A stretch of DNA of 64,000 bases from positions 14,136,001 to 14,200,000 of the forward strand of contig JBHGNT010000009.1 in assembly GCA_043228905.1 (NCBI GenBank), in the 5' to 3' direction. The translations under genes were made by a program, and so were the position numbers. Positions 12,401-31,700 of this stretch are shown here, piece after piece (position 1 is the first letter of the stretch; every line of letters starts with the position of its first letter). Below the pieces are notes generated by a model. It searched no databases. It saw only the letters and a list, made by a program, of their open reading frames with translations, and was not told the DNA's origin. The DNA is from Azolla caroliniana (taxonomy: Eukaryota; Plantae; Polypodiophyta).

Positions 12401-15400
12401 TCAACAAATAACGATCGTCAATTTGAACCGATCGAAGGATCTGAACTAGATATTATGGCACCTAGGAGATTTGGAAGAGCTCGAAGGAAAACAGAGTTTT
12501 ATCAACCAGGCCTTGACTATGTCAACTACGGGATGTAGGCGAACCAAGCACGTATGAAGAAGCCATGGCTGCATCGGACGCCGAAGCATGGCTACAAGCC
12601 ATGAAATCCGAAATGGACTCGATTCATCAGAATCAGACATGGGAGTTGGTTGAACTACCAGTTGGAAGGAAGCCACTACCTTGCAAATGGGTTTTCCGAT
12701 ACAAGTATGTATCCAACTCAGAGAAACCCAAGTACAAAGCTTGACTTGTCGCGAAAGGATTCAAACAGGAATATGGGGTCAACTACGATGAGATATTCTC
12801 ACCAGTAGTCAAGATGACCACCCTTCGACTCCTACTAGGAGTCGTGGCGACAAAAGATCTAGAGCTCGAGCAGATGGACGTAAAGATGGCATTGCTACAC
12901 GGAGATATGGAAGAAGACATATACATGTCTCAACCGGCAGGCTTCACGACGACGGGGGAGGACAATCACCTCGTATGTCGACTAAAGAAAAGTCTATATG
13001 GCCTAAAACAAGCGCCAAGAATGTGCTACCAGAAGTTTGACTCCTACATACGACAGCTTGGATACAACAGAATAGACTCCGACCCATGCATGTATGTTTG
13101 GCAACTGGCCGACGAGTCAAGGATTTATCTGATCCTATATGTCGACGACATGTTGATTGTAGGGAGCAATCAAGCAGAGATCGGTAAACTGAAGTGGAGC
13201 CTTCACGCAAAGTTCGCCATGAAGGAACTCAAACAAGCCCGACACATACTGGGCATGAGGATAGAGCAAAATCGGATGTCATTGACCAAAACTCTCTGAT
13301 TCTCATAGTCTGAATACATCCGCAAGGTGCTGAAGCGCTTCAACATGGAGAATGCGAAGCCAACATTGATACCGCTTTCGACGTCGATTAGACTATCAGA
13401 CAGAGACTCTCTTGCAATGGACAAGGAGAGAGAGCTTAATGGAAAGATACCCTACACATCGGCAATAGGAAGTATCATGTACGCAATGGTGGCAACCTGA
13501 CCCGACCTAGTCTATGCAGGAGGGGTGGTCAACCGGTACATGTCAAACCCAAGAAAGAAGCACTGGGAGGCCGTCAAGCACATCCTTAGGTATCAAAAAG
13601 AAACCACGGATGCACAACTGAATTTCGGATTGACAACCTCAGTCGAAGTCGAAGTCTACACCGATTCCGACTATGCCGAGAACACGGACAATCAGAAATC
13701 GACATCAGGCTACATCTTCACATATGGTGGCGATGCGATATCATGGAGGTCGAAACTTCAAGAGTGCACGACTCTGTCTACCACAGAAACCGAGTACATA
13801 GCAGCATCGGAAGTAGCGAAGGAAGCGATCTGGCTGCACCGACTGACTGTCGACTTTGGAACTGCAAACCGAAACAACTGACCAACGCTGACCATTTATT
13901 GCGATTCACAGAGCGCAATTCACCTCATCAACAATCCCATCTATCATGTGAAGACGAAGCACATTGAGGTGCGGTATCATCATATCCGGGATCTCGTAAA
14001 CGAAAAGAAACTTGAAGTCTAGAAGATCGACACCGAGGTGAACATCGCCGATTGCCTGACGAAGCCACTCCAAGATCTACGCTTCGGAGCACTAAGGATG
14101 AAAATGGGGCTACGACAAGCGACCAAGCAGAAGAAAGCCGAACGAGGAGCAAAAGGTAAGATCTGATCGGAACAATAACGACACATCCTATACATCTGCC
14201 GACTCGGCTGCATGCTGACCGACTTGTAACATATAAACTTAGATCAATTTTGTAATCTAGGCTTACGGGGGAGATAATCCCAAACACTTGTACATGCACG
14301 AAAGAGTAGTCCTTTTACGGGGGAGTTTGTTGGCATAAAAGGCCGTCTCCTTCCAAATTGTATCCGTCCAAGTGTGAACTCGCTAATAAGTTAGGGCTTA
14401 GTATATAAGCGAATACCTAACATTGTAAACACGTTCACATTCACAAGTGGAAGGATCGCGCACAAATGGAAGGATAAGGAATATTCCGTTTGATTTTGGG
14501 GTTTTTTTTGCCATTTCACAAAACACCTTGATACCAGTATCACAAGTTCTCAAAAACTTGATGAAAAAGCTAAAATTTTCACCATTTGGTAAAATTGAAA
14601 AATGCCAAAATTTGGCCAAATACAAAAAGTAACTTTGTGTATTTTTAAGGAGAAATTACAACTAGTAGTATTTTAGATCCTAACGAAATCATACTCGAAA
14701 GATTTCAAAACAATCAACTTTTTTATTTTATTTGATGAAATATTGTCTAAATTTCTTTCATATCGTTGCACAAAAAATACATTTAAGAGTTATTTGCATC
14801 ACTATCATTATTCCTTTCTTGACAATCACTACTATAGCTAATATACAATTGTGACTCTTCCTCCTCATTTTTAAATGTACCAATCAAATCATTGTCTTCA
14901 CTAAATGGTGTCTCCAAATTGTGTGCACTAAATCTTGTCCGCCTTCAATTTGAGATATCTTCTAGTCTTGGTAATATCTTTTTTATTATGTCTGTCGTTG
15001 TTGTTCTTAAACATCCAACTTTTGTTAGTGTAAAGTCATACACAATGATATCCACCTCACTAATGTCAATGATAGATGTATTACAAAAGTTTAATGCATC
15101 ACCACGTCCAAAACTTTACCAATGCAGAATTGGTGCCCTAGGTGATGACCATCTACATGTGTAGCTATTAATATCCCCACCTTGAGTTCTTGCAAGTTTC
15201 CTTGTCACCTGAGTTATGCTCGTGTTGTCATCCTTAGTTCCAAAAAAAAAAAATTAAAAAATTAAAAAAAATAAATAAATAAAAATTTGAAAAAAATTAC
15301 TTTAAACATGAACTAGGTACATTGTACTGAATTGTGGTGAAAAATTAGGGTTTTTCATTAAGTCAAGTTCGAATTTTTTATTTTTTTAAATTCGGGGGAA

Positions 15401-16547
15401 AAAACTTTGAACATAAATTTGATACATTGTATGGAATTGTGATGAAAACTCTGTTTTTTACATCAACTCAATACAATGTATGGAGTTCATGTTTAGAAAT
15501 CTTTTTTTTTTTCAAATAAAAGAGGTTTAGGGTTTACATGAACTTGAATTGTACTAAAATATCTGTTTTGACAAGAGTAAAAGATGCATATGGATGTTGT
15601 AGAGAATTATATTGCACAACAAGATACCTTATGGTGAACATGTGCTTCCTTGATTAACAAAAAACCATTAATAATTGTGTTGATGGTAATTGAACCTTGC
15701 AAATGCCATTTACTTCACAAATTTTGTTGGGGAGCTCTCAAAATGAAGAAGAGGAGAGCATTGTGGATACCTTGATAAGTATGTGATATGTTCAAATTGA
15801 TATATTAATGTTTACATCTAAGTTTGGCAGTTTTGACAGTTTATGAATATCATCTACATTTTAGGAGTTATGGATTTATCAAAATTGTTTATGAATATTG
15901 TATACATTTCTTGAGTTGTGAATTTATGGATGTTAATGAGCACTAAATTTATAGACAATGGCATTAAGGATTACAATGTTACCTCTTATACTTAAAGTAT
16001 TTTCAAGTCTAACAATAGATGTAACTTCCACTTCTGGAATCTACATCTTCTCAAGATGGTGAAACCATTAATCTTAACTTGTGTGTTAAGTTAACCATTG
16101 TGATTTTCTTTAGGTTAACTACATTTCATATTTGCAAACCATCAACGTTTAAGAATTTATTGAAAAACTATTCAATTTTAAAAATGATCATTTTGAAACT
16201 TGTTAAGTCTCAAAAAATTAACAAATTTTACATGTTATTTAAAACATGTGATATTGGTGTATCAAGTTTCTGAAAATCGCCTAAAATTGCAAGATTATCA
16301 AAGGAATGTATAATTGGAATGCACGATCCTTCCACTTGTGAATGCAAACATGTTTGTAATGAGTAATGACGAGAAGAGTATTGTATCTCTGAGCGAGAAC
16401 GAAGTAATAAGAAGCTTTCCATTAAAGCTCGATCGACTGTCTAAGTCTCGATTCACTGTATTTTTTGTGTGTTGTTTTCTGTGCATAAGCGAACAGGTCC
16501 ACAAACGTTTTCCACATACGTATACATAGATATACATAGTTCTGACA
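9477..16547 (+). mobile_element. Full-length decayed Ty1/copia element (Tork/Tnt1-like); 3' LTR interrupted by the non-autonomous DNA transposon
   Basis: 5' LTR 9477-9765, PBS 9768-9779, gag-pol with many stops (WLLDSDAT, LWHGRLG, YVDDML, KHIEVRYH), PPT before 14328, 3' LTR 14328-14427 + 16359-16547, TSD CATAC at 9472-9476 and 16548-16552. Confidence 0.95.
14428..16354. mobile_element. Non-autonomous internal-deletion derivative of the transposase + ParB-MTase transposon family
   Basis: TIR AACACGTTCACATTCACAAGTGGAAGGATCGCGCA / TGCACGATCCTTCCACTTGTGAATGCAAACATGTT. TGTA is duplicated relative to the empty 5' LTR. Contains remnants of the transposase 3' end (~14820-15070), the palindromes (~15300-15560) and the MTase 3' end (~15730-15786). 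Confidence 0.9.
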
Positions 16548-17848
16548 CATACCCGAAAGGATGTTCGGGTTTTGACGCCGCTGCCTACGTCCGAGATTGT
16601 GGTGCTCACTCCATGGGATCATTGCCTGACGCTTGTTCCTCGTGTCGGTTGTCGGCCGAAGGCTCCCATAGTGGCTCTTCTTGAGGTTCCTCCCATGCTA
16701 CGTCAGCCGTGACTTCGGGGCTAAGGTGGGTATCACTTGGTGTGGGCTCTGGTGGTTGCGGTGCCATGGTAACCTCTAGGACTTCGTCGTCCCCCTCCGT
16801 AGGCTCGTGGGTGTTATGTTCCCCGGAGTCGCTGTTTGGGAGTATGATGGCCGCCACTCTTTTCGCCTCCTCTGTTTTTTGTTTTTCGGCTTCGATAGCT
16901 TGGAGTTGGAGGGAGGTATGAAGTTAGCTATCACCGAAATCCTCCATTAGTTGGGTTATCTCTTCGGAGTGGCGATCGACCAAGGCTTGGTAGTTTTGAG
17001 TAAGGTCCTATCGGACTGTGGCAATGCTTTCCTCTCTTAGCTTGTAGAAGCATTTTCCTTCCTTCTAGCGGTTCTCTCGATCCGCCCTGTAGATGTGGAG
17101 GTTAGCCGCTTGCGCCGCCCATCCGGCCCAACCTCTGTTTAGGGCCGCTTGCAATTGGGTTGTGAAGAGTTCGCGCTTTGTTTGGAGGAAAATGCGAATG
17201 CGCTCAGTGCTCATCTGCGTGTGTGCCTGTAAGTCCTCGAGACATTTTTGGAGGTTATCAATTTTGCGTGTGTTGGCAGTCGCAACTTCTTCGTAGATTG
17301 CTTTTACCCCTTTCCATATTTGTGAATCCTTTTCATGGATGAAAAGAATGGCGTGCGGAAGCAATATAGGAAACCGAACAACAGAAAACGCAAGTTTAAT
17401 GGAAAGCTTAGGTTTGCACAGTACGCACGGGAGAGACAGAGAGAGAGAGTAAACACAAGAAATTAATTCAAAAATAATACTCAATCTATAACACGTTCGC
17501 GTTCACAAGTGGAAGGATCGCGCATAAATGGAAGGATAAGGGTAATTTTAGGGGTTTTTCAATGATTTTACAAAACACATTGATACCAGTATCATACAAG
17601 TTCAAACATACTATGAAAAAGGTTAAAAATCCACTATTTTTGTGATTTAGAAGTAACTAAAAAAAGACGAATATCAAAAACGTACATTCTCAATTTATAT
17701 CACAAACTTTACAACCAATGTTATTTTATAAGAAACGATTTTTGGGAAATCATAAGAATTCAAAACACATGATTTTATATTACTCGATTTGTTACAAGCG
17801 GAATGTAGTTACACTTAATAGCCAAATATACATTCATGATAGAGTCCT

Positions 17849-20629
17849 TTACGGAGAATCACTACTATAACTAATATACAATGACGATTCCTCCTCATCA
17901 TCCTCGGATGTACCAATCAGTGCATTATCTTCGTCATAAACCAAATGGTTTGACTCTAGATTATATGTAGCAGATCTCGTTTGCCTTTGACTCGAGCCAC
18001 CTTGTAGACCTGGTAATTTTTCTTTTATTATATCTATTGTTGACTTCCTTAATCGTCCGGCTTTTGTAAGTGTGAAGTCGTACACGATGATATCCACATC
18101 AGAGATATCAAGGGTCGAGGTGTTACGAATGTTTCGCTTCCTCTTCCTACCTCCCCTTCTTGTTTGGCATTCAATCATCTCCAATGTATACTTACCTGTA
18201 AAAGCATTTGCACTTCTAGTGTTGTACCAATGAACATTTATAGACTTGATCGTGTTTTCTATTTCATGCATTAGCACTTCTAGAATTTTACCAACCCAAA
18301 ATTGGTGGCCATGTGAGTTCTCATCAGCCGGCGTTGCAATCAACATCCCCGCGGTGAGCTCTTGCAAATTTCCTTGCCATCTAGCTTCGGCTGCTTTGGT
18401 CATCCTTGGTCCCACATAAATGTCTCTTTGTTGTGGATGGACCAAGCTGTCATTAATCGCATTTACTAGTCGCTCCAGACTTCTATTTACGCGATCATGT
18501 TGCAGCGACCATGTGAATGGCGTTTCCAAATTCCAATTATCAACAGATACACAATTGTCTATAATTTCATTCTGATCACTATAAAATACATCCCACCATG
18601 ACGTGTCTTGTTGTGCGGCATATTTCTTGGCGGCCTCAATATGCTTTCTTTTTTCTTCTAAGGCTTGGAGCCATGACCGTTTTTGTTCTGATACCAAGTC
18701 GCTCTGCAACTGTCCTTTCTTCTCAATTGGCATTTGCTTAGCTCCATGGACAATTGTACTCGGCATACAAAGTAATAACTGGCAACCACCTTCAGGTTCC
18801 CATGTTGTAGAAGATGAATATTGTTTAGCATACAAAAGCGTAGAACCACTTATTCCATTTTTCTTTATCAAAAAAATGTGATTGAAACTTATATTGTTTA
18901 ACTGAGCAAGCACTTTAACATTCCCACCACCCCCATCTAATATATATCTCTTAAAGTCATATACCTCCTTCAAGTGTAACACTTTTGGGCGTGGTGTATA
19001 TGCATCACAAATGACATCAAATAGTTTAGGTAAAGTGAAAGCATCATGCCGAGACAACTGTCTGGAGAATGTGCTAAACATCTGATCTATATGGTCATGT
19101 GTGTGGCCAACCAAAAGGAAATTGACTTTCACTTTCCTAAACAATTCTAGGTTGACCAACATACTTAGATAGCCAAATACAGTTGAATTTTTGTTCTCTC
19201 TAGCAGTATTGTCCAATTGAATGTATAGAACAGGGGGGAAAGGTTGTCCCCAAGACATCAAAACTCGGTGAATCACTGTAACTGTTAGTTTAGGGTCATT
19301 GTGAACATTGGGGTAAGTAATGAAGACGTGAGGTCGAACAGACCTATTATAAGCCAAGCATCCCACCAAGTGCATTTGAACAAGGCACTCATCATTGACA
19401 TCTTTGGGGAGCCTCCGCATATGCGGCAAGCATGTCTTCTTCTGGTCCATGCCATCTATCATTAAGCACATGTATTGTTCAGGCCTCTTCAAACACTTCT
19501 CTCTATGATGCATCGCCTTCCTTCGTTCTAAGGATTGTGCCTCACGATGCTCTTGTAGTAACTTCTTACTCGTATCCTTTTCCATTGATGTCTTTGCACC
19601 TTTAGCCAAACTTTTAAGATTTGCACAAATGGAGCAATACCCCATACGTACTTTACGAGGAATAATAACATTTGAAAACCGAGCTCTCCATAATCTTGTG
19701 AATTGGCTATAGGTGATAGACTTATTACGTGAGCCCAGCATTTCAGATCGATAGACATCATAAACTTCCCGACGGGTATAATTATCAGAAAGATGCATCC
19801 TACCTGTAGTGGGCATTACTTCACAATTTAACTGAAAGTAAGCTTTCATCCAGCCAATAGCTAGTCTTCCAATTGCACCTTTCATACTTGGAACCTCTTT
19901 ACAATTGAGCATCTGATCCCCGCTAAGTAGACGTTGTTGTACTCTATGTAGCCGCATGTTACTAACACATAACGCAATTTTGAATGCAACTCTACATATC
20001 TGTTGCGCATGGAAGATATAATACTCGAATGATACTTTGATCCCCGTACATTTGTCAGATACTAGTTGCATATGTGATCCGAGGTAAGTGTCTTGCTCAT
20101 CACCGGTCATCGAAAAATAGTATCGCCTTAATTCTCGCAACTTTGATTTTCCAATCATAGACATACAACCACGGGCACAACATATTTTGTTGACATCAAA
20201 TCCAATCTGTTTATCTGATGTCACCAAGCTAAATCTAGCCAGACGAATTCTTCGTGGGATTCTTCTAATATGCATAGGGCTCCCAGATTTCTCTTCCTGC
20301 ATAGAGGTTGGTGTAACCTTGTTACAGTCTAATTCTCTGTTCTGACCATCGCCAATGTTATTCAATGTTTCCTGGGCACTTCCTTCATTCTCGGTATCTT
20401 TATTAATATCGTATTCTTCAATAGAGAACTCTTCACATGTGTCATTATTTACATTCCCTGTAGATGAGCTCAGACAATATTCTTCGATAGAATATGGTGA
20501 GTCAGTCGAAAGACAATATTCTTCAATCGAATATGGTGACTCTGTTGACAAACAATACTCTTCAGTAGAAAACGATGGGTCTGATGACAAACAATATTCT
20601 TCAATCGAGAACGGTGAATCTTCACTCAT
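17849..20629 (-). CDS. Intact intronless 926-aa DDD transposase, Sola1/DUF7869-like
   Basis: RNase H-fold motifs LMIDGMDQ, YIQLDNTARENKN and FLLVGHTHDHIDQMFS, with upstream ICRVAF and CSIC...H motifs. Sits between the TIRs. The superfamily call comes from recalled motifs, not a search. Confidence 0.85.
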   Translation of the reverse strand: MSEDSPFSIEEYCLSSDPSFSTEEYCLSTESPYSIEEYCLSTDSPYSIEEYCLSSSTGNVNNDTCEEFSIEEYDINKDTENEGSAQETLNNIGDGQNRELDCNKVTPTSMQEEKSGSPMHIRRIPRRIRLARFSLVTSDKQIGFDVNKICCARGCMSMIGKSKLRELRRYYFSMTGDEQDTYLGSHMQLVSDKCTGIKVSFEYYIFHAQQICRVAFKIALCVSNMRLHRVQQRLLSGDQMLNCKEVPSMKGAIGRLAIGWMKAYFQLNCEVMPTTGRMHLSDNYTRREVYDVYRSEMLGSRNKSITYSQFTRLWRARFSNVIIPRKVRMGYCSICANLKSLAKGAKTSMEKDTSKKLLQEHREAQSLERRKAMHHREKCLKRPEQYMCLMIDGMDQKKTCLPHMRRLPKDVNDECLVQMHLVGCLAYNRSVRPHVFITYPNVHNDPKLTVTVIHRVLMSWGQPFPPVLYIQLDNTARENKNSTVFGYLSMLVNLELFRKVKVNFLLVGHTHDHIDQMFSTFSRQLSRHDAFTLPKLFDVICDAYTPRPKVLHLKEVYDFKRYILDGGGGNVKVLAQLNNISFNHIFLIKKNGISGSTLLYAKQYSSSTTWEPEGGCQLLLCMPSTIVHGAKQMPIEKKGQLQSDLVSEQKRSWLQALEEKRKHIEAAKKYAAQQDTSWWDVFYSDQNEIIDNCVSVDNWNLETPFTWSLQHDRVNRSLERLVNAINDSLVHPQQRDIYVGPRMTKAAEARWQGNLQELTAGMLIATPADENSHGHQFWVGKILEVLMHEIENTIKSINVHWYNTRSANAFTGKYTLEMIECQTRRGGRKRKRNIRNTSTLDISDVDIIVYDFTLTKAGRLRKSTIDIIKEKLPGLQGGSSQRQTRSATYNLESNHLVYDEDNALIGTSEDDEEESSLYISYSSDSP

Positions 20630-21300
20630 GGCTTGAGGTCTAGATAGGGCTCTCTAAGTTATACTCCTCTCTAAACATATACTCCTCCCTAAACATAAAC
20701 TTCTCTCTAAACAAAAGCCAAATCAATAGAATGTCTATATTATGTAATATTCTATTAATACAATACATCTAAAAATTATTTTTAATAAAGTAATTTTACT
20801 TAAATTATCAATCATTATATAAACTAGATCTAAATGATGTTAAATCAAGTAAAATATAAAACTAATCATTAACAAGCCTTGAATATGTTGGATTAATGTT
20901 AAAATCATTGGCTAATTAATGACACCCATTTTGATATAGAACGTCTCACGCATTGGTTCTTTAATGCTCACCATTTTAAATATTAGACTTATCAATCATT
21001 GGTTAATTCATGCCCACATATTTAATACATAACATTTGAGAGTCATAACAATTGTTGCTTTTAGTAATCAATCATTGGTACATTCATGAACCTCTATCAT
21101 TGTCTCCTTCATAACCTTTGAAGTCATTGTAGGTTGTTATGACTATAAAAGATTGATCAATATGTTAGTTTGACTTTGTAATCATTAATACAATCATAAG
21201 TTACTCTAGTTAATGTGACTATGGTTACCAACTAACTATCCTCAAAGTTACCAACATTGGTTAAGGTGACTATGGTTACTTTAACCATGTGTTCAATCCC

Positions 21301-21308
21301 TATAAATA
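21301..21308 (+). promoter_or_regulatory. TATA box of the ParB-MTase gene
   Basis: CCTATAAATA lies ~150 bp upstream of ATG 21452, with a pyrimidine-rich Inr-like TCACTCA ~27 bp downstream. Confidence 0.6.
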
Positions 21309-21451
21309 GGAAGACCTCATCATATTTCACTCACCAGAGCGTACAGAGCGTACAGAGCACACAGAACGTAGAGAGCACATAGAGCACACAAAGCACTCAG
21401 AGCACAAAGCACGAAAGCGCGATCTCCGCCTCCACTTCAACACGAACAACC

Positions 21452-24400
21452 ATGTCTTCCAAGAGAATCGAGCGCGAGGACTCCAGGTAGGCCTCTGGCA
21501 CTGTGGACATTTTTGTAAATATGTTTCGTTTCTCAAGAACTCGATACGGCGTATCGAGTTCATGTATAGAATACAAATATTTATACACGAACTCGATACG
21601 CCGTATCGAGTTCGTGATTAAAGTGTAGGTTTTAAACACGAACTCGATACGCCGTATCGAGTTCGTGTTTAAAGTGTAGGTTTTAAACACGAACTCGATA
21701 CGCCGTATCGAGTTCGTGTATAAAGTGTAGGTTTTAAACACGAACTCGATACGCCGTATCGAGTTCGTGTTTAAAGTGTAGGTTTTAAACAGGAACTCGA
21801 TACGCCGTATCGAGTTCGTGTTTAAAGTGTAGGTTTTAAACAGGAACTCGATACGCCGTATCGAGTTCCTGTTTAAAGTGTAGGTTTTAAACATGAACTC
21901 GATACGCCGTATCGAGTTCTTGTTTAAAACCTACACTATAAATAGGAACTCGATACGGTGTATCGAGTTCCTTTTTAAAATTCAAACTTTAAACACGAAC
22001 TCGATACGGTGTAATGAGTTCGTGTTTAAAGTGTAGGTTTTAAACACGAACTCGATACGGCGTATCGAGTCCCTGTATATAAGAAGGCTTTGAGAGAGAA
22101 AAATCGTTTATGGGGTGGAAATGATATCAAATTGTCTGGCAAAATCAGTCTTTTTTATGTTGACTTTACTTACTTTTAAAGAAATACATGCTCTAATTAT
22201 AGGGGTTTTATGACCTACTTTAGCTTAAAATAGTAGAAAATGATCTACAAATTGCCTTTACTATGGCAAATTCTCCTCAATATAGGTTTAGAATCTATAT
22301 AAGTCATACCTACTATTTAAAAGAATATATAACCCGTTTTACTTATTACGATATATATTTTCTAGGTTGAATAGCCCTGCCTATAATAGATTTTTGAATA
22401 TGTTACTGCTCCTGGAAACTGTTCTTCATTATAATATACAACTTCAATCTACGTGACTGTCTAACTTATGTTTTTGCATATACTTTCTTAAATAGGTCGT
22501 TTGAGAACCTGTCGGACCGACCCGTGAAGAAAATTAAGCTTCGCATACAAGGTTCTCCAATCGAAGCCTAGACCAAGGTAGCTCCTGAGACCATGAAGAG
22601 AGGAAAAAAGCTTCTCTTTAACGAAGAGACAAAATCTCAGCCACATAGTGATGTTAGCCAAAAGAAACTTGTCGCCGCTACTGGAGGCGAAGACCTTCCT
22701 GACCGAGATCTAACGGACAAGGAATGGTGTATGCAATATGTCGACTCAAAGAAAAAAGTCGTATTGTATACAGCAAAGAAGAAGGGTGAGGGGCAGCTTG
22801 GAAAAGAAACCCCATTTATGTATGGCCGAATTCTACGATTTGACTACGAAGATGCAGATTCGGCCAACATACTGGTAATGATAGAGTGCTCCAAGGGGGT
22901 ACGTAAAGTGTTCCTTTCAGAAGACCTTTTAGTAAAGGAATCTTGTGGGCCTGAAGTGTTCAAAAAAGCACTTGATAACTCACAAAACCTGATTGTTACC
23001 TTGAGGCCTTATATACAAGGCCATGTAACTCTAAGAGATGAAGAGCCCGCCCCCTTGAAGGCCACAAAAAAGGTATCCAAAGTCCAGTCAAGACCAGCCA
23101 AGAAGAAGACAACGAAAATGTCGGATACGGATTCAACAAGTGAAAATGAAGAAGAGGATAATAAGGGGACGCCAGGAGCCGAGCTAGCCTCGGGTGTTTT
23201 GTCATCCGAGCAGAATAAAATAAGGAGAGAGTTAATGCAACGGAAGCTGGTCAGGAAAGGGCAAGTATTTAATTTGCCTATAACACACATCCATTGGCCC
23301 CCTATTGATGAAAAAGCAGGTCGAAGACCACTTGAGATTAGAGAGCCTCACCGCATGCATGTTCAAAATCTCAAGAAAAAAATGAAAATTAATCCTCATG
23401 CCACTGTGGTGCCTTTTATTGTTATGGTAGATCCTGAAGAATGTGAAACCATTGAAGATTTTGATATTAGAAAGCATGATCAATATAATTATTTTGTCAT
23501 TGGTGGATCGCATTCAGCAGAGGCATGTCGGCAACTTGTGAGAGAACATCCAACCACTTTCTTCTTCAAGTATGCCGAGTGCAAAATTTATGTTGGGCTC
23601 ACAACCGAAGAGGCTAAGCTATTGGCATGGGACCATAATAATGATAATGACTATAGGCAGAAAATGTCGTCTATTGAGCGTATACGGTTCTTCCACCACG
23701 AGTATTTAGATGTGAAACAAAAGTTTGGTGTGAAGTTACATCCAGGCCTTCGACGTCAATGTCTGCATGAAGTCGGCATTGTGGTAGATGATAATGTTAG
23801 GTCCGATGGTCTTCGAAAGTATGAGTCTTGGTTTCAATTGGTGTTTAGAGATGGAGAAGTATGGGACCTCCAAGATCAAATCTTCTCAATGTGGGAGAAT
23901 AAGGAGGTAAAGGGTCAACGACAAAAGAAATGTAGGGTTGACCCTCAACTAGAATTAAAGTCACAAGCCGCCAAGAAAATTGACTTGACAATTGAAGAAG
24001 CGGCAGACGACATGAAGCTGTCTCTATGGAGAGCGATGCAAGGTATTAAGGACGAGCAGCTTCTTGTGTCGGTTTTGTCAAGGGTTGTGGCGAAAGATTT
24101 AAGCCTTGAAGAAATGGTCACTGAGTTCAATAAGTAAGTCTTTCAAATACTGAAATTGTAGTCTATCTGGTGTAATTCAAAGTTCTAATCTTGATTTCTA
24201 ATTTTACAGTCATAAGGTGTACATGAAGATCCAAGAAGTTATGATGAAACAACTTGGATGTATAACTTGGGAACAAGTGACCGAGGATTATCCTCTAACG
24301 TCTTCGTATAAGGCGTTATCAGAGTATTTTATTGCATTCAAGGATTGGGTTAGTATTCATGTTTTTTCATTACCCTTTCATCATATGTAGAGCTTGTATA

Positions 24401-25721
24401 ATAATACCTGATGTCCTATTGCTTCTATTAGAAACCGTGTCGAGGCAAGAAACAAGGAGAAGTTAAGGATATACACGATTTCCCTACATCCTTCCTTGCA
24501 CATCTCGAGCGAGCCAGAAAAGAAAAGGATCGTCGCTTAGTCAAGGCGTACGAAATGGAGGAAGATGGCTCGTTTAAAAAATTTAGCCACAAAAAAGATA
24601 TTACGAGAGATCTTTACTACAATGTGGTTTGCGGTGATGTCATCGACTTGATCCAGAAGGTGCCAAAGAAGGAATATACGCTAATGATTGCGGATATTCC
24701 TTACGGATTTCGAATGGCTGGGTCATCATACGACGATGAACCGTTTAGGTTTAAACAATTGGAGAAGATGGTCAAGGATTTCGCTGAGCTAACGACCGCA
24801 TCCTTGTGGCGAATAGTTGTCTTTCATAGTATGGACCAAGGGTACTCGGTAGCTCAAGCTTTGAGATCTCGTTGCCATGGCATCGAGAACCTTGCATGGT
24901 AAGGATTATTTGTAGGTGTCTTTCATTATATTGCAATTCTTAAGGTTGTTGAATCTATTCTTAACTCGATGAATTATTTTTTATAGGATCAAGACCAATG
25001 TAAATAGAGGGCCAACTTTTCGGTTCGTTAATGCCATTGAATACATAACGGTTGGCTACTTCGATGAAATTAAAAAACAGAGAATCAAAGAGCATTCTAA
25101 TGAAGTGGGAGGTTCAAATCTGTTGGTATATCCAGCAGTGACTCGGAAATTGCGACATGTCACCACGACAGAACGGGGACTTGTCAACCCATACCAAAAA
25201 CCTCAACGACTTATGATGCGCTTGATCGAGATGTTTTCTGTCGAAGGAGACTGGATATTAGATCTCTTTTCTGGCACAGGTATTCCTCGAACTAGGGTAA
25301 CGATCTTGAGATAACCAAACACTTTTTTTTCGTTTGACAACTAAATCTTCTTGTTACTTACATCATAGGAACTACGTCAGCATGTGCATTGAAGCTGTTT
25401 AGAAATACAGTTGCATTGGAGAAGGACGAGGACCAAGTTATATTTATTAATATGCGGATTAAGGCTTTGTGGGAGTGCCCAGACCAGGATGAGGAGGTCG
25501 GTGCAAAGAACCTCGCCAATACAGAAAGGTTTCAACCTGCTTCGCGAGAGCCTATTCCTCCGTTAGCCGGCGAACCGGGGGAGCTAATAGAGCTTGATGA
25601 TGAGCTTATAGAAGATATTTCGTTGGCTCGGCTAACAGGGGAAACCAATGCACGTATAGCCGAAGACAGTTCTACACAAGATGATGAAGAAAATGACGTT
25701 GATGAATTGATTGCTATGTAA
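21452..25721 (+). CDS. ParB/Srx-like domain + beta-class N6-adenine/N4-cytosine DNA methyltransferase, ~974 aa; exons 21452-21486, 22496-24133, 24210-24348, 24432-24898, 24987-25279, 25369-25721; one premature TAG at 22569-22571
   Basis: Five frame-consistent GT-AG introns; total 2925 nt, divisible by 3. Motif IV IADIPYG precedes W.K.N...E.I, NPYQKPQRLMMRLIEMFS and motif I EGDWILDLFSGTGTTSACALKLFRNTVALEKD. ParB-like segment IRE...VQNLKKKM...PFIVMV...YFVIGGSHSAEA. Confidence 0.88.
21537..22072. repeat. Array of 11 palindromic 51-bp units in intron 1 of the MTase gene
   Basis: Consensus TTTAAACACGAACTCGATACG-C-CGTATCGAGTTCGTGTTTAAA + GTGTAGGT. Cores at ~21537, 21589, 21640, 21691, 21742, 21793, 21844, 21895, 21946, 21997 and 22048. 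Confidence 0.97.
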
Positions 25722-28700
25722 TAGACTCTATAAAGAATATGACACTGACGATTTGTTAAGATTTCACATTATTAATACAAATTTTGGGTTTTACCTAGTG
25801 GATTCTATTCTTTATAATCATTTATATGTTTCAATTTTATTTTTATATACTTGATTAGTAGATTTATGATATTGGTTTCACCGCGTGCATAGCTGACTAC
25901 CAAACTTATGGAGAAACATGAACTAGCTTAAATGGAGGCTGATTTTGGTCCAAGCTAACCTTAACAGAACATGGCCCTATAATTGTTGCCATGACTGTCC
26001 ATGTTGTTATTATGGATCTTTGTCTTATATTGTTAAAACTATTATGTTTCTATTCCATTGCTGCTTAGATTGTGTAGTGTGTTGATAATGGTTCCAGTTG
26101 CGTTATCGTTCGGACTTTGATCTTGTGTGAATCACCTAAGCAATAGAGTAGATCAATTTTAAATGCAGGTATGAATGCCTAATAGGTTTGTTATTTCCAC
26201 GACATTATCCTAAAGTTCACTGCCTTACATTGTGCACAATTATATACACATATGGTTTGATCCCATATGAACAAACTGAGGAATAGATTAGATCAACTTT
26301 TAATATAAGTATTGAATACTTTAATAAGTTAGTTATTCCAATCACTTATCCTAATGTGCACTATCCTACATTTTCCACAATTACATACATGCATGTATGG
26401 GTCAAAGTATAAATTATATCTCATTTTATTAGTATGGATACAAGTACACCTCATATTTTTGTAAAACCTACCTAATTAATATAAGTCTTTAAGTTAGTGT
26501 TTCCCTTGTCGCACAATAGTGCCATATTGAGCCATAGTTGAACTTTATTATGCCTACATTAACTTATCAACATGTCTAAACTTGCATGATTTCTAATGAT
26601 CTCCACTCGTAGATTTATCATGTATTTTTATATTTGCAAATTCTTATCAAGTTGAGGAACATGTGATACTAGTGCATCCAATTATTGTAGAGAGGGTGTA
26701 TTTGCTTCGTTTTAAGAAGATTCTACAAGTGGAATGCGCAATCCTTCCACTTGTGAACGCGAACGTGTTTCTATACATACATCGTGTTCAGTGAGCACCT
26801 TTTATACAAGCCCCGACAATCGGGTTGACACAAGTACTGACAGTACTTTACTGCTCATAAATGAGCCTCGACACTCACTCCCAAAACTATTCCTTACGAG
26901 GAATATCTTTCAATCGGCCTCGTGGTTTACGCACCGCTATGACCATGTTATGCGTACCGATTTTACGCACCCAGTCTACGCATTGGTTACGCATCGTATT
27001 ACGCACAAATGTTGAGCTTGTCTCTCAACACTCCCCCTCAAGCTCAACTTGAGGTTCCGCCTGCTCCGCCGGATCTACGCTCCGGCTTCTCCTAGCTCCA
27101 CACCTTGCTCGCGCTCCTCGACTTGTTCAACTCCACGCGCTTCGACCCTTCCGGTCGGCTTGTCTGCTCCCATGGCCCTTCACAACTCCCTTGATGTCGC
27201 AGTGTTGGCGCTTCTCCTGTTGCCTTCTTCTCCGCTTGGTCCTTGGTTGATTTAGTGCATCCGAATCAAACATCCGAACCAACTTGGCTACCTTCAATCG
27301 GTTTTCGCTCTCGTCTGAGTTGGCTGTCTCCAACTTGTCTTCGGTCTTCTTGGCCTTGACGGCGTCATCTCCCCCATGCTTGGTTGACTTCGGCTCTTCC
27401 TTTCGGCTGCTCCCTTATGTCCGCTTCGGGATTTTTCCGCAGATCCACCCTCGGCTTCTTCAGCCGATCTGAAGTCAAATTCGTCATTTGACTTGGCATC
27501 GCGGTCTTCTCCGCTCCTTTCCTGCTTCCTTCCATGGTCATTTGGGAGATCTCTCCCCCTCAAGTTTGGCACGTCGAGGTGACACAACCCAAGTGCACCC
27601 GAGAATTGCCGCAACTTGTCCAGACCAAGGGGCTTGGTGAAGATGTCAGCAGTTTGCCGATCCGTTGGAACATACTGAAGTTCGACTTCACCAGAAAGGA
27701 CACGCTCACAGATAAAATGGTAGTGCACCTCAATGTGCTTGGTTCATGCGTGGAAAACGGGGTTCTTTGCAAGCTGGATGCTGCTGAGGTTGTCGCAGTA
27801 GATCGTCGTAGGATCGGGCACCTCCTCTTGCAGATCCTTAAGTAGCTGCTTCAACCATACGGCTTCGCATGTCGCGACAACCGCTCCTCTATACTCAGCT
27901 TCGGTGCTCGACAGTGCAACTGTCGGCTGCTTCTTACTGCTCCATGCTATCGCGGCACTCCCAAGAGAGAACGTGTATCCGGACGTGGATCGGCGATTGG
28001 CGACATTGCTAGCCCAATCAACATCAGTGTAGCTGACCAACTCCGAGGTTGTACTGGTCCGATATAGCAGTCCCCGGTCCTTAGTGCCGCTTACGTATTG
28101 TAGTACGCGTTGCGCACACTGAAGGTGCTCCTCAGCAGGCCGTGCCATGAACTGATTGATCACCCCGACCGGGTAGCTGAGATCTGGTTGGGTGATGGTC
28201 AAGTATATAAGGTTGTCGACTATCTGTCGGGACCTCGTCGTGTCGCATACCTTTCCGGACTCGGGGCAAAGCTTGACGGTTCTATCCAGAGGAGTCGAGA
28301 CGGACTTACAGTTTGCCATCCCGAATTTGAAGAGCATATTCAACACGTAATGGCGTTGGCTGATCAATATGCCTTCGGAGGTACGGATCACTTCGATCCA
28401 GAGGAAGTAATGAAGGTCTCCCAGATCCTTCATGTCGAATGATGCCGCAAGCTGGAGCTTCACGCGGTTGATTTCACTTAGGTCGGCGCCGGTGATGACC
28501 AAGTCATCAACATAAAGTAGAATACTAACCAGCTCGAGTCGACCTTTCCGGATGAACAGTGAGGAGTCCGATTTCGACGTCGCAAAGCCCATCCAATGCA
28601 GTTGTCGCGTGATCTTCGCGTTCCAAGCACGCGGGGCTTGCTTTAGTCCGTAAAGGGACTTCTTCAATCGGCACACTGCCGACGTGTTTGTTCCAGAGTG

Positions 28701-31700
28701 AAATCCGGGGGGTTGTACCATGTACACCGCTTCCCTCAGAGTTGGACTCGTGTCGGTCTGACTTGTTCCTATCCATGCCGGAATCCGACACCTTCTTCTT
28801 CCCTTTCTCTTTGCGCGTAAGCTGTCTCCTTGGCTTCCTGCGCAGAGAATGCACGACCGAGTCTCCACTACTCGCCGGCTCTTCATCGGACTGGTCGAAC
28901 CAACTCAGTCGTCCATTCGATCTGCTTAACTGAAACGAAATCAGACTCTCTTCACAGGTCCCGATTTCAGGCTCATCTGGAGGCATCTCGGCCTCGCTGA
29001 CCTCATCATCAGAACTCGGATTGGAGGTGAGGTCTGGAGTCGGAGGCAAGTACCAGGACGCGGACTCGTCAAACACAACGTTGCGGCTTCCTTCCGAAAT
29101 ATAGTTCGTGCGCCGACACTTTTTCTCCGATCCGATTCTAGATGTATACTGCGGTTCGTACCGCCTCGACCCAGTAGAACTTGGGCAAGATCTTTTCTTC
29201 AATCATTGCCCACGCCGATTCCACAATCGAACGATTCTTCCTCTCGGCCACGCCGTTTTGCTCCGGCGTGTATCTACAACTGAATTTGCGCCGAATTCCC
29301 ATCTATTGTAGATAACCGTTAAATTGACCGGAAAAGTATTCTTTTCCGCCATCCGACCGTAGGCACTTGATCTTCCTTCCTGTTTTCGTTTCCACAAACC
29401 TTTTGAGGTCCCGAAAACAGTCGAAGACTTCGCTCTTCCTCTCAATGAGGTAGATCCACGTGTGCCGCGTGTAGTCGTCGATGAAGGAGACGAAATATCG
29501 GCTCCCGCCAAGACTAACGTTTTGTGCCGGCCCCCACACATCGGAGTGTATCAAGTCGAGCTTGTTCCGGCTCCAGTTACGCTCGTTGGGGAAAGGAAGT
29601 TGGTGTTGCTTCCCTAGCTGGCAAGCTTCACAAATTTGCGCCTTCCGGCCACTAAATTTGGGCAATCCGAACACCACTTGTTTCGATTGCAGGTCTTGAA
29701 GCCGTTGGTAGTTGACGTGGCCTATCCGATTGTGCCTAAGTCGATGTCCGACTCGACTTTTTGTCCCTTCGCGAACATTGCGGTGTCACCGTCAGTAGAG
29801 TCGAGGATGAACATCCTCCCATCTCTGCGCCCTTGCGCAATAATACGGCCTTCTTCCTCAATGAAGCACCCGAGGTGTGTAAACCGGACCTGCATCCCTT
29901 GGTCGATGATCTGTCCGACCGACACCAAGTTCTTCGTGATTGTCGGAACGTGTAGCACGTTCATGAGTTTCCCTTTCTGCCCGACATGGCTCAGGGGAAC
30001 TTCTTTGACATTCGCGATCGGATGCGGAGTGTCGTCTCCGGTTGTGACTACTCTTGGTTGCGTCGGTTTCTCAAGGTATAAGAACCACTCCTTGTGGCAC
30101 GTCATGTGGTTTGACGCGCCGGAGTCGACGTACTACACCTCGTCTGATTTCGGGGCGGACTTGTTCATTGAGTTTGCTTCATGTGACCCTTTTCCGGCTT
30201 TTCCGGATCTTTCGGCATAGTGCGATCACTGCTGGTTTCCTTTGTCGGTATGTCCGGAACCAGATCCAGAACCGGTTCTCTCTGACTCAGCGTGCTTTTT
30301 CCAGCACTTGCTCTCCCTGTGGCCTTTCTTGCCACAGTACCAGCATTCTGCGGCGGATTTCCCTTGCCGGTTCTCGTTGCCTCGACTCCCCCTGTTTTTG
30401 GAGGGTCCAGAATTGCTGTCAACATCACTTCGGTGCCTTCTTCCTTGATCCCGTCGGCCGCCTCCATTGCGTGCCGACTCCCCTCGTCCGCCACGACCAC
30501 AGGTCCTCTCTCCCTCAATGTACAACATCTTGTTGTCGACATGTGTGCTTGTCGACGTACCCGCGTGATTCTCCTCTCTAAGGAGCATCGACTATAAGTC
30601 GAAAAACGACGATGTATTCTCCCTGGTACACACAGCAGTTCGGAACGCTCCAAACTTTGACGCCAAACCCCCAAGATAGACCTGGACCATCTCGCTTTCC
30701 TCGATGTTCACATCGATGGAAGCTAAGGAGTCACATATGTCCTTCATCTTTGAGGTATAGTCGGCCACCGACAAATCGCGTTGTCGTAGGTTGCTCAACT
30801 CTTGTCAAAGCTGAAGCTTCCTGGATGTGGTGCTCGCGGCGAAGATCTTCTTCAGATTTTCCCACACACCTTTCGGCGTTTTTGCATCCCGAACGTAGCT
30901 TAACAGTTGTTCGCCCACACAAGACGCGAAACAGTACAGGACTCTGCTCGCCGATTGCTCCCACGCCGGGAAGTCTTTGTGTGTTGAATCGGGTGTTGTG
31001 TCATTTGCTCCATTGACATAGCTTTAGTAACCGTGTCCGAGTAGGTACTGGTGCATCTTGTACGACCAAGATGTGTAGTTGGTTTTGTCGAGCTTCTCTG
31101 TTGGAAGCGAGCTAGCCATTCCTCTGTCCATCGGTTTTCTTGTTCTTCTTCGTTGGTTTTTCCTTCAGGCAAAGTCGGCTGCAGAGGTTCTCAACCCTCG
31201 CGCTCTGATACCATGAAAAGAATGGCGTGTAGAAGCATTATAGGAAACCGAATAACAGAAAACGTAGGTTTAATGGAAAGCTTAGGTTTGCATAGTACGC
31301 ACGGGAGAGACAGAGAGATAGAGTAAACACAAGAACTTAATTCAAAAATAATTCTCAATCTATACATACATCGTGCTCAGTGAGCACCTTTTATACAAGC
31401 CCTGACAATCGGGTTGACACAAGTATTGACAGTACTTTACTGCTCATAAATGAGCCTCGACACTCACTCCCAAAACTATTCCTTACGAGGAATATCTTTC
31501 AATCGGCCTCGTGGTTTACGCACCGCTACGACCATGTTATGCGTACCGATTTTACGCACCCAGTCTACGCACTGGTTACGCATCGTATTACGCACAAATG
31601 TTGAGCTTGTCTCTCAACAATGGAGTTCCTCCAATTGGCCCATTTCCTTATTCAAGCGGGTTTTGCCATCTTTTACCCCGTTCCATATTTGTGACTCCTT

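What the first reader, a model, noticed from the sequence alone, without database searches (positions are those of the whole stretch)
17490..26769. Plant DNA transposon carrying its own spliced ParB-DNA amino-methyltransferase gene, divergent from an intact DDD transposase
Seen: TIRs and a TSD bracket two head-to-head genes, an intact 926-aa transposase (-) and a 6-exon ParB-like/MTase gene (+), with a palindromic array between them. Known: Sola-type elements are usually described as transposase-only. Amino-MTases in eukaryotes are rare bacterial acquisitions (bdelloid N4CMT, Marchantia DN4MT1, DIRS-associated Dam-like domains). Inference: this is a self-contained transposon-plus-epigenetic-writer system that may mark its own DNA (6mA or 4mC) to regulate transposition or counter host 5mC silencing. 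It could also be a vehicle for amino-MTases entering plant genomes.
Basis: partly seen in the sequence, partly recalled or inferred. Interest (0 to 1): 0.95.

Follow-up and report, generated by a model that had tools for sequence, protein, structure and literature searches.

The report
Fern transposon carrying ParB-methyltransferase gene
This is an intact 9.3-kb cut-and-paste DNA transposon of a fern-like plant that carries its transposase plus a conserved second gene, a bacterial-type ParB-like DNA binder fused to an amino-DNA methyltransferase; the same layout was published for algal transposons in 2025, so it extends a known kind to land plants.

Summary
A 36-nt TIR pair (35/36) and a TCTAT duplication bracket 17490-26769. 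Inside lie an intact 926-aa DUF7869 transposase (- strand), a 10.5 x 51-bp palindrome array, and a + strand gene with five coding exons.

Fold searches confirm an RNase H-like DDD transposase core and a ParB/Srx-like domain. The C-terminus is a beta-class N6_N4 amino-MTase with motif IV D-I-P-Y and an intact motif I. It is nearer to adenine than to cytosine-N4 enzymes.

This is not a one-off capture. The same head-to-head pair, with an intergenic palindrome array or pair checked in five of them, recurs in five other fern contigs, Ceratopteris richardii, the liverwort Riccia sorocarpa and a metagenome contig. The four intron positions recur in all six fern copies examined. Paralogues occur in Ginkgo and Chara. 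Non-synonymous divergence is low while synonymous sites are saturated.

The novelty claim is weakened. A 2025 Ectocarpus paper describes a Sola-1 element with an opposite-strand ParB-like/MTase gene, and red-algal Plavaka elements carry ParB and PF01555 genes beside inverted-repeat arrays.

Untested: expression, methylation activity and target, Sola membership. First-stage notes (s1-497312, s1-500821) report the cassette elsewhere in this genome.

Verdict: new land-plant member of a known kind, moderate interest.

The parts
17485..17489 (.). Left target-site duplication TCTAT
   Evidence: Identical pentamer directly outside both TIRs.
17490..17525 (.). Left terminal inverted repeat (36 nt), contains a GATC
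   Evidence: 35/36 complementary to 26734-26769. The same terminus occurs on L002, L003 and L008-L012.
17849..20629 (-). Transposase CDS, 926 aa, intronless, DUF7869
   Evidence: ORF. Pfam PF25273 at E 1.5e-50. Sixty homologues, 90% down to about 30% identity, in ferns, Riccia, Chara and Cymbomonas.
18710..19642 (-). Catalytic core (residues 330-640) with candidate triad D392 (19454-19456), D473 (19211-19213), D515 (19085-19087)
   Evidence: AF2 model at pLDDT 85.7 with RNase H strand/helix order. Best structural matches are retroviral integrases, Mos1/Metnase and IstA, Z 9.4-8.0, and Foldseek finds the same kinds. D473 and D515 are invariant, and D392 is conserved except for an N in the Ceratopteris copy.
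20471..20621 (-). 39-bp tandem repeats encoding the repeated S-I-E-E-Y-C-L-S N-terminus of the transposase
   Evidence: Repeat family D4; translation.
21537..22070 (.). Array of 10.5 x 51 bp, each unit holding a 19-nt palindrome (CTCGATACG-S-CGTATCGAG), in the divergent intergenic region
   Evidence: TRF score 772. 11 matches against 0.01 expected. The half-site occurs nowhere else in the element. CpG o/e is 2.6. Equivalent arrays or pairs lie in the same place in L002, L001, L004 and L005.
22593..24133 (+). MTase-gene exon 1 (514 codons): uncharacterised N-terminus, acidic/basic linker, ParB/Srx-like domain and helical DNA-binding-like region
   Evidence: ORF. 481 homologues at E<1e-3. Donor is GTAAGT.
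23259..23660 (+). ParB/Srx-like N-terminal domain (residues ~223-356), with G-G-S-H-S in place of ParB box II
   Evidence: AF2 at pLDDT 81. Foldseek top hits are Noc and ParB at E 1e-4, prob 1.0. VIA: Caulobacter ParB NTD Z 10.0, rmsd 2.3 A over 99 residues; KorB Z 9.1 over 189 residues reaching into the helical region. No Pfam or PDB sequence-level hit.
24210..24348 (+). Exon 2 (46 codons)
   Evidence: AG|..|GT boundaries. 74-91% identical in other copies.
24432..24898 (+). Exon 3: catalytic half of the MTase, motif IV D-I-P-Y at 24693-24704
   Evidence: Alignment A4: D, G and the following D invariant, with P-Y-G-F kept in most members from Chara to ferns.
24987..25279 (+). Exon 4: N-P-Y-Q-K-P motif and the start of the AdoMet-binding motif I (F-S-G-T-G, split by intron 4)
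   Evidence: Pfam PF01555 at 31-33.8 bits against a cut-off of 26.7. 98% identical in L002 while the transposase is 71%.
25369..25721 (+). Exon 5: end of motif I, rest of the AdoMet domain, acidic tail, stop codon
26734..26769 (.). Right terminal inverted repeat
26770..26774 (.). Right target-site duplication TCTAT
14428..16354 (.). Old non-autonomous relative (1.9 kb): same TIRs, 3' part of the transposase, decayed array units, no MTase gene
   Evidence: TIR matches. tblastn remnants of the transposase C-terminus. blastn 67-71% to both ends and to the array. CpG o/e 0.38, GC 0.29. Flanked by TGTA on both sides.

Best explanation
An autonomous, probably recently active, two-gene cut-and-paste DNA transposon of a streptophyte-wide family. 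Gene 1 is a DUF7869 transposase with an RNase H-like D-D-D core, probably Sola-1-like. It recognises the 36-nt TIRs and makes a 4-5-bp target duplication. Gene 2 is transcribed divergently and is a conserved accessory gene. It encodes a ParB/Srx-like domain plus a helical DNA-binding region, fused to a circularly permuted (beta-class) amino-DNA methyltransferase.

Shown: the anatomy, the folds, the conservation of the pair, and purifying selection on both genes.

Inferred: the ParB-like module binds the palindromes arrayed between the two genes, much as ParB binds parS. This concentrates the MTase on the element's own DNA. There it writes most likely N6-methyladenine (less likely N4-methylcytosine), either in the TCGA-containing palindromes of the divergent promoter region or at the GATC-bearing TIRs.

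The mark would then serve one of two ends. It could tune expression of the two genes and hinder host silencing. Or it could tell replicated (hemimethylated) copies from unreplicated ones, as Dam methylation does for IS10/Tn5 and 5mC hemimethylation does for Ac.
For: TIR and TSD. Transposase fold and triad. ParB fold. MTase: Pfam on exon 4; the full-length Ginkgo homologue P0067 scores PF01555 at E 7.6e-18; the nearest solved enzymes are RsrI, CcrM and MboIIA at 2e-7. Motif IV D-x-P-Y-G-F is kept in most members aligned from Chara, Riccia, Ginkgo and ferns (D and G invariant).

The same head-to-head pair occurs in L001, L002, L008, L011 and L004 (Ceratopteris), L005 (Riccia, genes R1sor_010795/010796) and L007 (metagenome). 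Identities of the two genes fall together: 71/74, 54/56, 50/59 and 32/38%.

There are no stops in any exon. dN is 0.02-0.43 with dS saturated. Intron positions and GT..AG are conserved in six fern copies.

The palindrome arrays keep their place, and within ferns the TCGAT(A/G)C half-site persists while period and spacers change. Half-sites are absent from the subterminal regions.

Many near-identical pieces occur in a DNA run of the same organism: 1112 contig pieces at >=99%.

The same functional idea was published for algal elements (PMC12477816; 10.1101/2025.02.11.637652).
Against: There is no RNA evidence for either gene and no spliced joints. No methylation data exist. Motif IV lacks the first proline of the canonical (D/N/S)-P-P-(Y/F/W), and the catalytic half scores poorly against Pfam and PDB, so activity is not assured. 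ParB box II (GERRxR) is replaced by G-G-S-H-S, and no sequence-level ParB match exists. Binding of the array by this protein is only an analogy. The array could equally be a promoter or enhancer element, or a transposase site. In Chara, two tandem ParB-MTase copies have no DUF7869 gene within 10 kb, so the MTase gene can exist apart from the transposase.
Confidence: 0.6

Rival explanations
1. The MTase-like domain is catalytically dead. The protein works only as a DNA-binding or architectural factor, for example a repressor or activator of the divergent promoter, or a helper in transpososome assembly.
For: Motif IV has I, F or L where the first proline should be. Only the AdoMet-binding half scores well against Pfam and PDB. 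There is precedent: the MTase domains of DIRS1 elements are judged inactive (PMC4738411).
Against: The residues that matter most are kept in most members aligned from Chara to ferns: D, P, the aromatic residue, the following G-F, N-P-Y-Q-K-P and F-x-G-x-G. Exon 4 is 98% identical at saturated dS. Such constraint on the AdoMet pocket is not expected of a mere scaffold.
Confidence: 0.2
2. The MTase is active but acts in trans on host chromatin or genome-wide, or on RNA, rather than on the element's own array. The array is a bidirectional promoter or enhancer, or a transposase-binding site, unrelated to the ParB-like domain.
For: The array sits exactly in the divergent promoter region. The uncharacterised N-terminal 200 residues could be a chromatin reader, as in bdelloid N4CMT with its chromodomain (PMC8885841). 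Chara holds ParB-MTase copies without a nearby transposase.
Against: A palindrome array or pair lies beside the ParB-MTase gene in all five copies examined for it, and red-algal elements with a different transposase (Plavaka) also pair a ParB-domain gene with inverted-repeat arrays. That ties arrays to the ParB module rather than to the transposase.
Confidence: 0.15
3. One-off capture or chance adjacency: a host or bacterial-contaminant MTase gene happens to lie inside one transposon copy.
For: None beyond the prior that plant transposons often capture gene fragments.
Against: The pair is found in at least eight independent contigs from ferns, a liverwort and a metagenome, with co-diverging sequences, spliceosomal introns in the land-plant copies, and plant-like flanks containing a Copia element.
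Confidence: 0.02

Closest known systems
Ectocarpus Sola1-1_Ec32 (brown alga; PMC12477816, Genome Biol 2025)
   Same: [quoted passage not shown] The authors propose that it binds and modifies its own transposon.
   Different: The algal element is a 21.5-kb giant with an 1104-aa protein. This one is a compact 9.3-kb land-plant element with a protein of about 930 aa, four short introns and a defined 51-bp palindrome array. I could not compare the sequences directly, so homology as opposed to convergence is unproven.
Red-algal Plavaka (EnSpm) and Chondrus Mutator elements with PAG2/PAG3 (Bostrychia paper, 10.1101/2025.02.11.637652)
   Same: Transposon accessory genes include a PF01555 DNA methylase and a ParB-like DNA binder. 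Tandem arrays of inverted repeats lie next to the ParB-domain gene. Self-binding and self-modification are proposed.
   Different: The transposase superfamily differs. ParB is fused there to a 2OG oxygenase and the MTase to a SET domain, in separate genes. Here ParB and MTase form one polypeptide.
Fungal KDZ/Plavaka transposons with TET/JBP genes (Iyer et al. 2014, cited)
   Same: A DNA transposon carries a DNA-modification enzyme as a conserved accessory gene.
   Different: The enzyme is an oxidiser of 5mC, not a methyl writer. There is no ParB module, and the transposase differs.
Bacterial and phage ParB-domain + N6_N4 MTase proteins and ParB-Tls loci (PMC4738411; general knowledge of the PF02195+PF01555 architecture)
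   Same: Same domain pairing and the permuted beta-class MTase order. This is the likely ultimate source.
   Different: The plant protein has introns, long eukaryote-type linkers, a divergent box II and a divergent motif IV. The best sequence match to any solved bacterial MTase is only 33 bits.
Marchantia DN4MT1a/b and bdelloid N4CMT
   Same: Bacterial-type beta-class amino-MTases at work in eukaryotic genomes.
   Different: Those are host genes with a (T)SPPY motif typical of N4C enzymes. This one is transposon-borne, has D-I-P-Y, and scores better against adenine MTases. Direct comparison with DN4MT1 was not possible because no sequence was on hand.
VANDAL/VANC anti-silencing system of Arabidopsis Mutator elements (as cited)
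   Same: A transposon-encoded accessory protein acts on the element's own sequence to change its epigenetic state.
   Different: VANC is not an enzyme of this kind and causes loss of 5mC. No homology.

Membership tests
Sola (Sola-1) DNA transposon superfamily | DDD catalytic triad in an RNase H-like core | tested here: met
   D392, D473 and D515 lie on strand 1, at the end of strand 4 and on the following helix of a confident model. The top structural matches are all DDE/D integrases and transposases.
Sola (Sola-1) DNA transposon superfamily | 4-bp target-site duplication (from my memory of Bao et al. 2009; the paper is not held) | tested here: inconclusive
   The main copy has 5 bp, TCTAT. 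The neighbouring non-autonomous copy has 4 bp, TGTA, or 5 bp with a 1-nt slip. L001, L002 and L008 show no clear TSD.
Sola (Sola-1) DNA transposon superfamily | Significant sequence similarity to reference Sola transposases (Repbase) | not testable with these tools
   No Repbase or Dfam library is available. Pfam only says DUF7869, and no paper mentions DUF7869. The only indirect support is that Ectocarpus Sola1-1 has the same accessory gene.
Beta-class N6_N4 amino-DNA methyltransferases (PF01555) | Pfam score above the gathering cut-off | tested here: met
   Exon 4 alone scores 31-33.8 bits against 26.7. The Ginkgo homologue P0067 scores 65.7 bits.
Beta-class N6_N4 amino-DNA methyltransferases (PF01555) | Permuted order: catalytic motif IV before AdoMet motif I (F-x-G-x-G) | tested here: met
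   D-I-P-Y lies in exon 3, and F-S-G-T-G spans exons 4 and 5.
Beta-class N6_N4 amino-DNA methyltransferases (PF01555) | Canonical motif IV (D/N/S)-P-P-(Y/F/W) | tested here: not met
   The first proline is I, F, L or A in all family members; D is invariant, and P and the aromatic residue are kept in most. This is a variant motif, and activity is undetermined.
ParB/Srx N-terminal domain proteins | ParB/Srx fold | tested here: met
   Foldseek E 1e-4, prob 1.0 to Noc and ParB. VIA Z 10.0, rmsd 2.3 A over 99 residues to Caulobacter ParB.
ParB/Srx N-terminal domain proteins | CTP-binding box II G-E-R-R-x-R / Pfam PF02195 match | tested here: not met
   G-G-(S/N/G)-H-(S/T) stands in its place. No Pfam or PDB sequence hit. 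The motif resembles the G-G-C-H-R of sulfiredoxin (my recollection).
ParB/Srx N-terminal domain proteins | Helix-turn-helix domain that binds a palindromic parS-like site | tested here: inconclusive
   The helical region aligns with the DNA-binding domains of KorB (Z 9.1, 189 residues) and Spo0J-parS (Z 5.3). Palindrome arrays or pairs lie next to the gene in all five copies examined for it.
Transposon-borne ParB-MTase accessory proteins (algal class of PMC12477816) | ParB-like + DNA MTase in one protein, encoded inside a DNA transposon on the strand opposite the transposase | tested here: met
Transposon-borne ParB-MTase accessory proteins (algal class of PMC12477816) | Sequence homology to the algal proteins | not tested
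   No algal sequence was returned by the searches (searches list streptophyte and unnamed hits only).
Eukaryotic N4-cytosine MTases (Marchantia DN4MT1, bdelloid N4CMT) | S-P-P-Y/F motif IV and closest kinship to N4C enzymes | tested here: not met
   Motif IV starts with D. N4CMT and M.PvuII score E about 0.1 against 2e-7 for adenine MTases. DN4MT1 has TSPPY.

The most novel reading that the evidence does not exclude
Land-plant genomes (ferns, liverworts, Ginkgo) harbour active transposons that write their own amino-methyl mark (6mA or 4mC). A ParB-like module loads on a parS-like palindrome array inside the element. The element uses the mark either to time transposition to replication or to shield itself from host 5mC silencing. 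These elements would also be the pool from which host amino-MTases, such as liverwort DN4MT1, were domesticated.
Probability: 0.2. Interest if true: 0.85.

Novelty: new member of a known kind. Interest (0 to 1): 0.5.

Why it matters
Transposons that carry their own DNA-modification enzyme are rare. Until 2025 they were described only in fungi and algae. This finding shows that one such class, ParB-like binder fused to an amino-MTase, is widespread, conserved and apparently recently active in land plants. Fern copies are compact, have a sharply defined candidate binding array, and exist in many near-identical copies. That makes the self-marking hypothesis directly testable with long-read methylation calls, a recombinant enzyme and a binding assay. 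It also matters for reports of 6mA or 4mC in plant genomes, and for annotation: these genes are currently labelled 'hypothetical' or 'DNA methylase N-4/N-6 domain protein' in Ceratopteris, Riccia, Ginkgo and Chara.

Tried and rejected
1. Pfam and NCBIfam on exon 1 gave no ParB hit. A profile of 16 homologues against PDB sequences gave only noise. The ParB claim therefore rests on fold comparison alone.

2. phmmer of the transposase against PDB gave nothing.

3. The ESM Atlas look-up of the N-terminal 120 residues of the accessory protein scored 0.78, which is noise. That region stays uncharacterised.

4. RNA evidence: no RNA run holds the stretch. The two guessed RNA runs laid nothing, and the one run of unknown kind gave unspliced contigs. 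Expression and splicing are unproven.

5. TSD length could not be settled. L001, L002 and L008 have no recognisable duplication.

6. Searches meant to link the MTase to bacterial, algal or Marchantia proteins returned only Ginkgo, Chara and unnamed contigs. The word-index search is not sensitive enough, so a blank means little.

7. The Bao 2009 and Yuan & Wessler 2011 papers on Sola are not held.

8. A one-off capture was considered and rejected.

9. All searches of the window's gene were made exon by exon, by reference. Whole-protein statements rest on full-length database homologues (P0067, P0079). No fold of the MTase domain was made.

10. Complex prediction was not used. It cannot test protein-DNA binding.
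Full report
**1. What is there**

The repeat finder returns a 36-nt inverted repeat, 17490-17525 against 26734-26769, that is 97% complementary. The pentamer TCTAT abuts both outer ends. G+C drops from about 0.5 in the flanks to 0.29-0.44 inside.

The - strand holds one uninterrupted 926-codon ORF, 17849-20629. Its only Pfam match is DUF7869, at E 1.5e-50.

On the + strand I reconstructed five coding exons from open frames and splice signals: 22593-24133, 24210-24348, 24432-24898, 24987-25279 and 25369-25721. All four introns are GT..AG and 76-89 nt long.

Between the two start codons lies a tandem array of 10.5 units of 51 bp, at 21537-22070. Each unit centres on a 19-nt palindrome. That core matches 11 times against 0.01 expected by chance. 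Its half-site occurs nowhere else in the element.

**2. The transposase**

A model of residues 330-640, built on 19 homologues, has pLDDT 85.7 and the strand/helix order of an RNase H-like core.

An exhaustive structural comparison puts retroviral integrases, Mos1/Metnase and IstA on top, at Z 9.4-8.0 with 128-174 aligned residues. Foldseek finds the same kinds.

D392, D473 and D515 sit on strand 1, at the end of strand 4 and on the next helix. D473 and D515 are invariant in 13 homologues. D392 is replaced by N only in the Ceratopteris copy. This is a D-D-D enzyme.

Whether it belongs to Sola could not be tested. No reference library was on hand, the founding papers are not held, and no paper mentions DUF7869. 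From my recollection of Bao et al. 2009, Sola elements make 4-bp duplications. Here the intact copy has 5 bp, while the old copy next door has 4 bp, or 5 with a 1-nt slip.

**3. The accessory protein**

Each was searched by reference.

- **ParB-like part.** Exon 1 has no Pfam or NCBIfam match, and a profile against PDB sequences gave only noise. A model of residues 201-514 (pLDDT 81) matches Noc and ParB first (Foldseek E 1e-4, prob 1.0).
  - The Caulobacter ParB N-domain aligns at Z 10.0, rmsd 2.3 A over 99 residues.
  - KorB aligns at Z 9.1 over 189 residues, running on into the helical region that in ParB binds DNA.
  - ParB box II is replaced by G-G-S-H-S, conserved as G-G-x-H-S/T across the family.
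- **MTase part.** Exon 4 alone passes the PF01555 cut-off.
  - The order is permuted. Motif IV (D-I-P-Y, 24693-24704) precedes motif I (F-S-G-T-G, split by intron 4).
  - In an alignment from Chara, Riccia, Ginkgo and ferns the motif reads D-(I/F/L/A)-P-(Y/H)-G-F, with D and G invariant.
  - The full-length Ginkgo homologue scores PF01555 at E 7.6e-18.
  - Among solved structures it is nearest to the adenine MTases RsrI, CcrM and MboIIA (about 2e-7). N4-cytosine enzymes reach only about 0.1.
  - Adenine is therefore the likelier target. The missing first proline leaves activity open.

**4. Not a one-off**

The transposase has 60 listed homologues. Fetching their contigs shows the same divergent pair, transposase on one strand and the accessory gene on the other. 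In the six fern copies all five exons are present:
- L002, L008 and L011, about 70% transposase identity.
- L001, 54%.
- Ceratopteris richardii L004, 50%.
- The liverwort Riccia sorocarpa L005, where the genes are annotated R1sor_010795 and R1sor_010796.
- A metagenome contig, L007, where the MTase gene is intronless.

Identities of the two genes fall together: 71/74, 54/56, 50/59 and 32/38%. No exon carries a stop. dN is 0.02-0.43 while dS is saturated. The four intron positions and their GT..AG ends are kept in six fern copies.

Exon-1 homologues number 481 at E<1e-3. Chara braunii has at least a dozen annotated paralogues and Ginkgo five. In one Chara locus, two tandem intronless copies have no transposase within 10 kb.

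Within the source organism, a DNA run yields about 3,900 contig pieces over 5 kb of the element, 1,112 of them at >=99% identity. Two first-stage notes report the cassette on other pieces of the genome.

A 1.9-kb relative at 14428-16354 keeps the ends, the 3' part of the transposase and decayed array units. It has lost the rest. Its CpG o/e is 0.38 against 0.84 for the intact copy.

**5. The array**

Every fetched copy that I examined has palindromes in the same intergenic place.
- L002 has the same core as the window.
- Ceratopteris has about 16 units of 31 bp around GTCGATGCC-W-GGCATCGAC.
- L001 has a pair with GTCGATGC...GCATCGA.
- Riccia has TGTATGCGGGAATACA-type palindromes.

Within ferns the TCGAT(A/G)C half-site persists while period, spacer and flanks change. 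That is the pattern expected of a protein-binding site. I infer that the binding protein is the ParB-like module. This rests on analogy with ParB-parS and on the red-algal case below. It has not been shown.

**6. What is known**

The literature search changed the novelty verdict.

PMC12477816 (Genome Biol, Sept 2025) describes Ectocarpus Sola1-1_Ec32. [quoted passage not shown] The Bostrychia paper describes red-algal Plavaka elements with a PF01555+SET gene and a ParB+2OG-oxygenase gene. Tandem inverted-repeat arrays lie next to the latter.

The 2015 survey of eukaryotic adenine MTases lists ParB-HTH fusions only for a different MTase group, in chlorophytes and chytrids. The bdelloid paper states that its N4CMT has no eukaryotic homologues. 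I found no paper on land-plant members.

**7. Verdict**

The family-level reading is well supported. The mechanism (self-binding, self-methylation, probably 6mA) is a reasonable but untested inference. The architecture is already published for algae.

This is a new, compact land-plant member of a known kind. Its value is as a tractable test case and as a correction to plant genome annotation.

Noticed in passing
window 27744-28886 (-) and flanks 26770-30000, 16355-17489: A Ty1/Copia-type reverse transcriptase/RNase H ORF (380 aa) lies just right of the element. Both flanks are GC-rich (about 0.5) with CpG o/e near 1. The element, and the old copy 1.1 kb to its left, appear to have inserted into or beside a Copia retrotransposon.
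   Followed up: no
window 20471-20621 (-): The transposase N-terminus consists of four 13-residue tandem repeats (S-I-E-E-Y-C-L-S type) encoded by 39-bp DNA repeats. Function unknown.
   Followed up: no
window 17516-17519 and equivalent TIR positions in L002, L008, L011: A GATC sits inside the TIR in most copies. The single mismatch between the two TIRs of the window element destroys it on the right side (AATC). It could be a methylation-sensitive transposase site, by analogy with IS10/Tn5. Speculative.
   Followed up: partly
window 18000-18400 (-), transposase residues ~740-860: A conserved C-terminal block (F-W-I/V-x-K-V ... V-x-W ... G-K-Y in alignment A2) looks like a small beta-barrel reader-type domain. 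No Pfam hit, and it was not folded.
   Followed up: no
L006:10001-39538 (Chara braunii BFEA01000570.1): The annotated 1825-aa protein GBG86584.1 is a gene-model fusion of two tandem, intronless ParB-MTase copies about 25 kb apart. No DUF7869 gene lies within the 49.5-kb locus.
   Followed up: partly
L008:3838-3891: Two elements of the family lie tail-to-head with only 6 bp (ATGCTT) between the right TIR of one and the left TIR of the next. In this subfamily the left terminus reads ATCACTG, where the right-end terminus, read inward, is AACACGT.
   Followed up: no
L004:9881-12613 (Ceratopteris richardii CM035423.1): The annotated transposase KP509_18G011500 has N in place of the first catalytic D. 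The neighbouring five-exon ParB-MTase gene is not annotated at all in that assembly.
   Followed up: partly
window 22593-23190 (+), accessory protein residues 1-200: An N-terminal region conserved among fern copies and recognisable in Ginkgo precedes the ParB-like domain. No family or fold could be assigned (Pfam gave only a low-complexity hit; Atlas score 0.78).
   Followed up: partly
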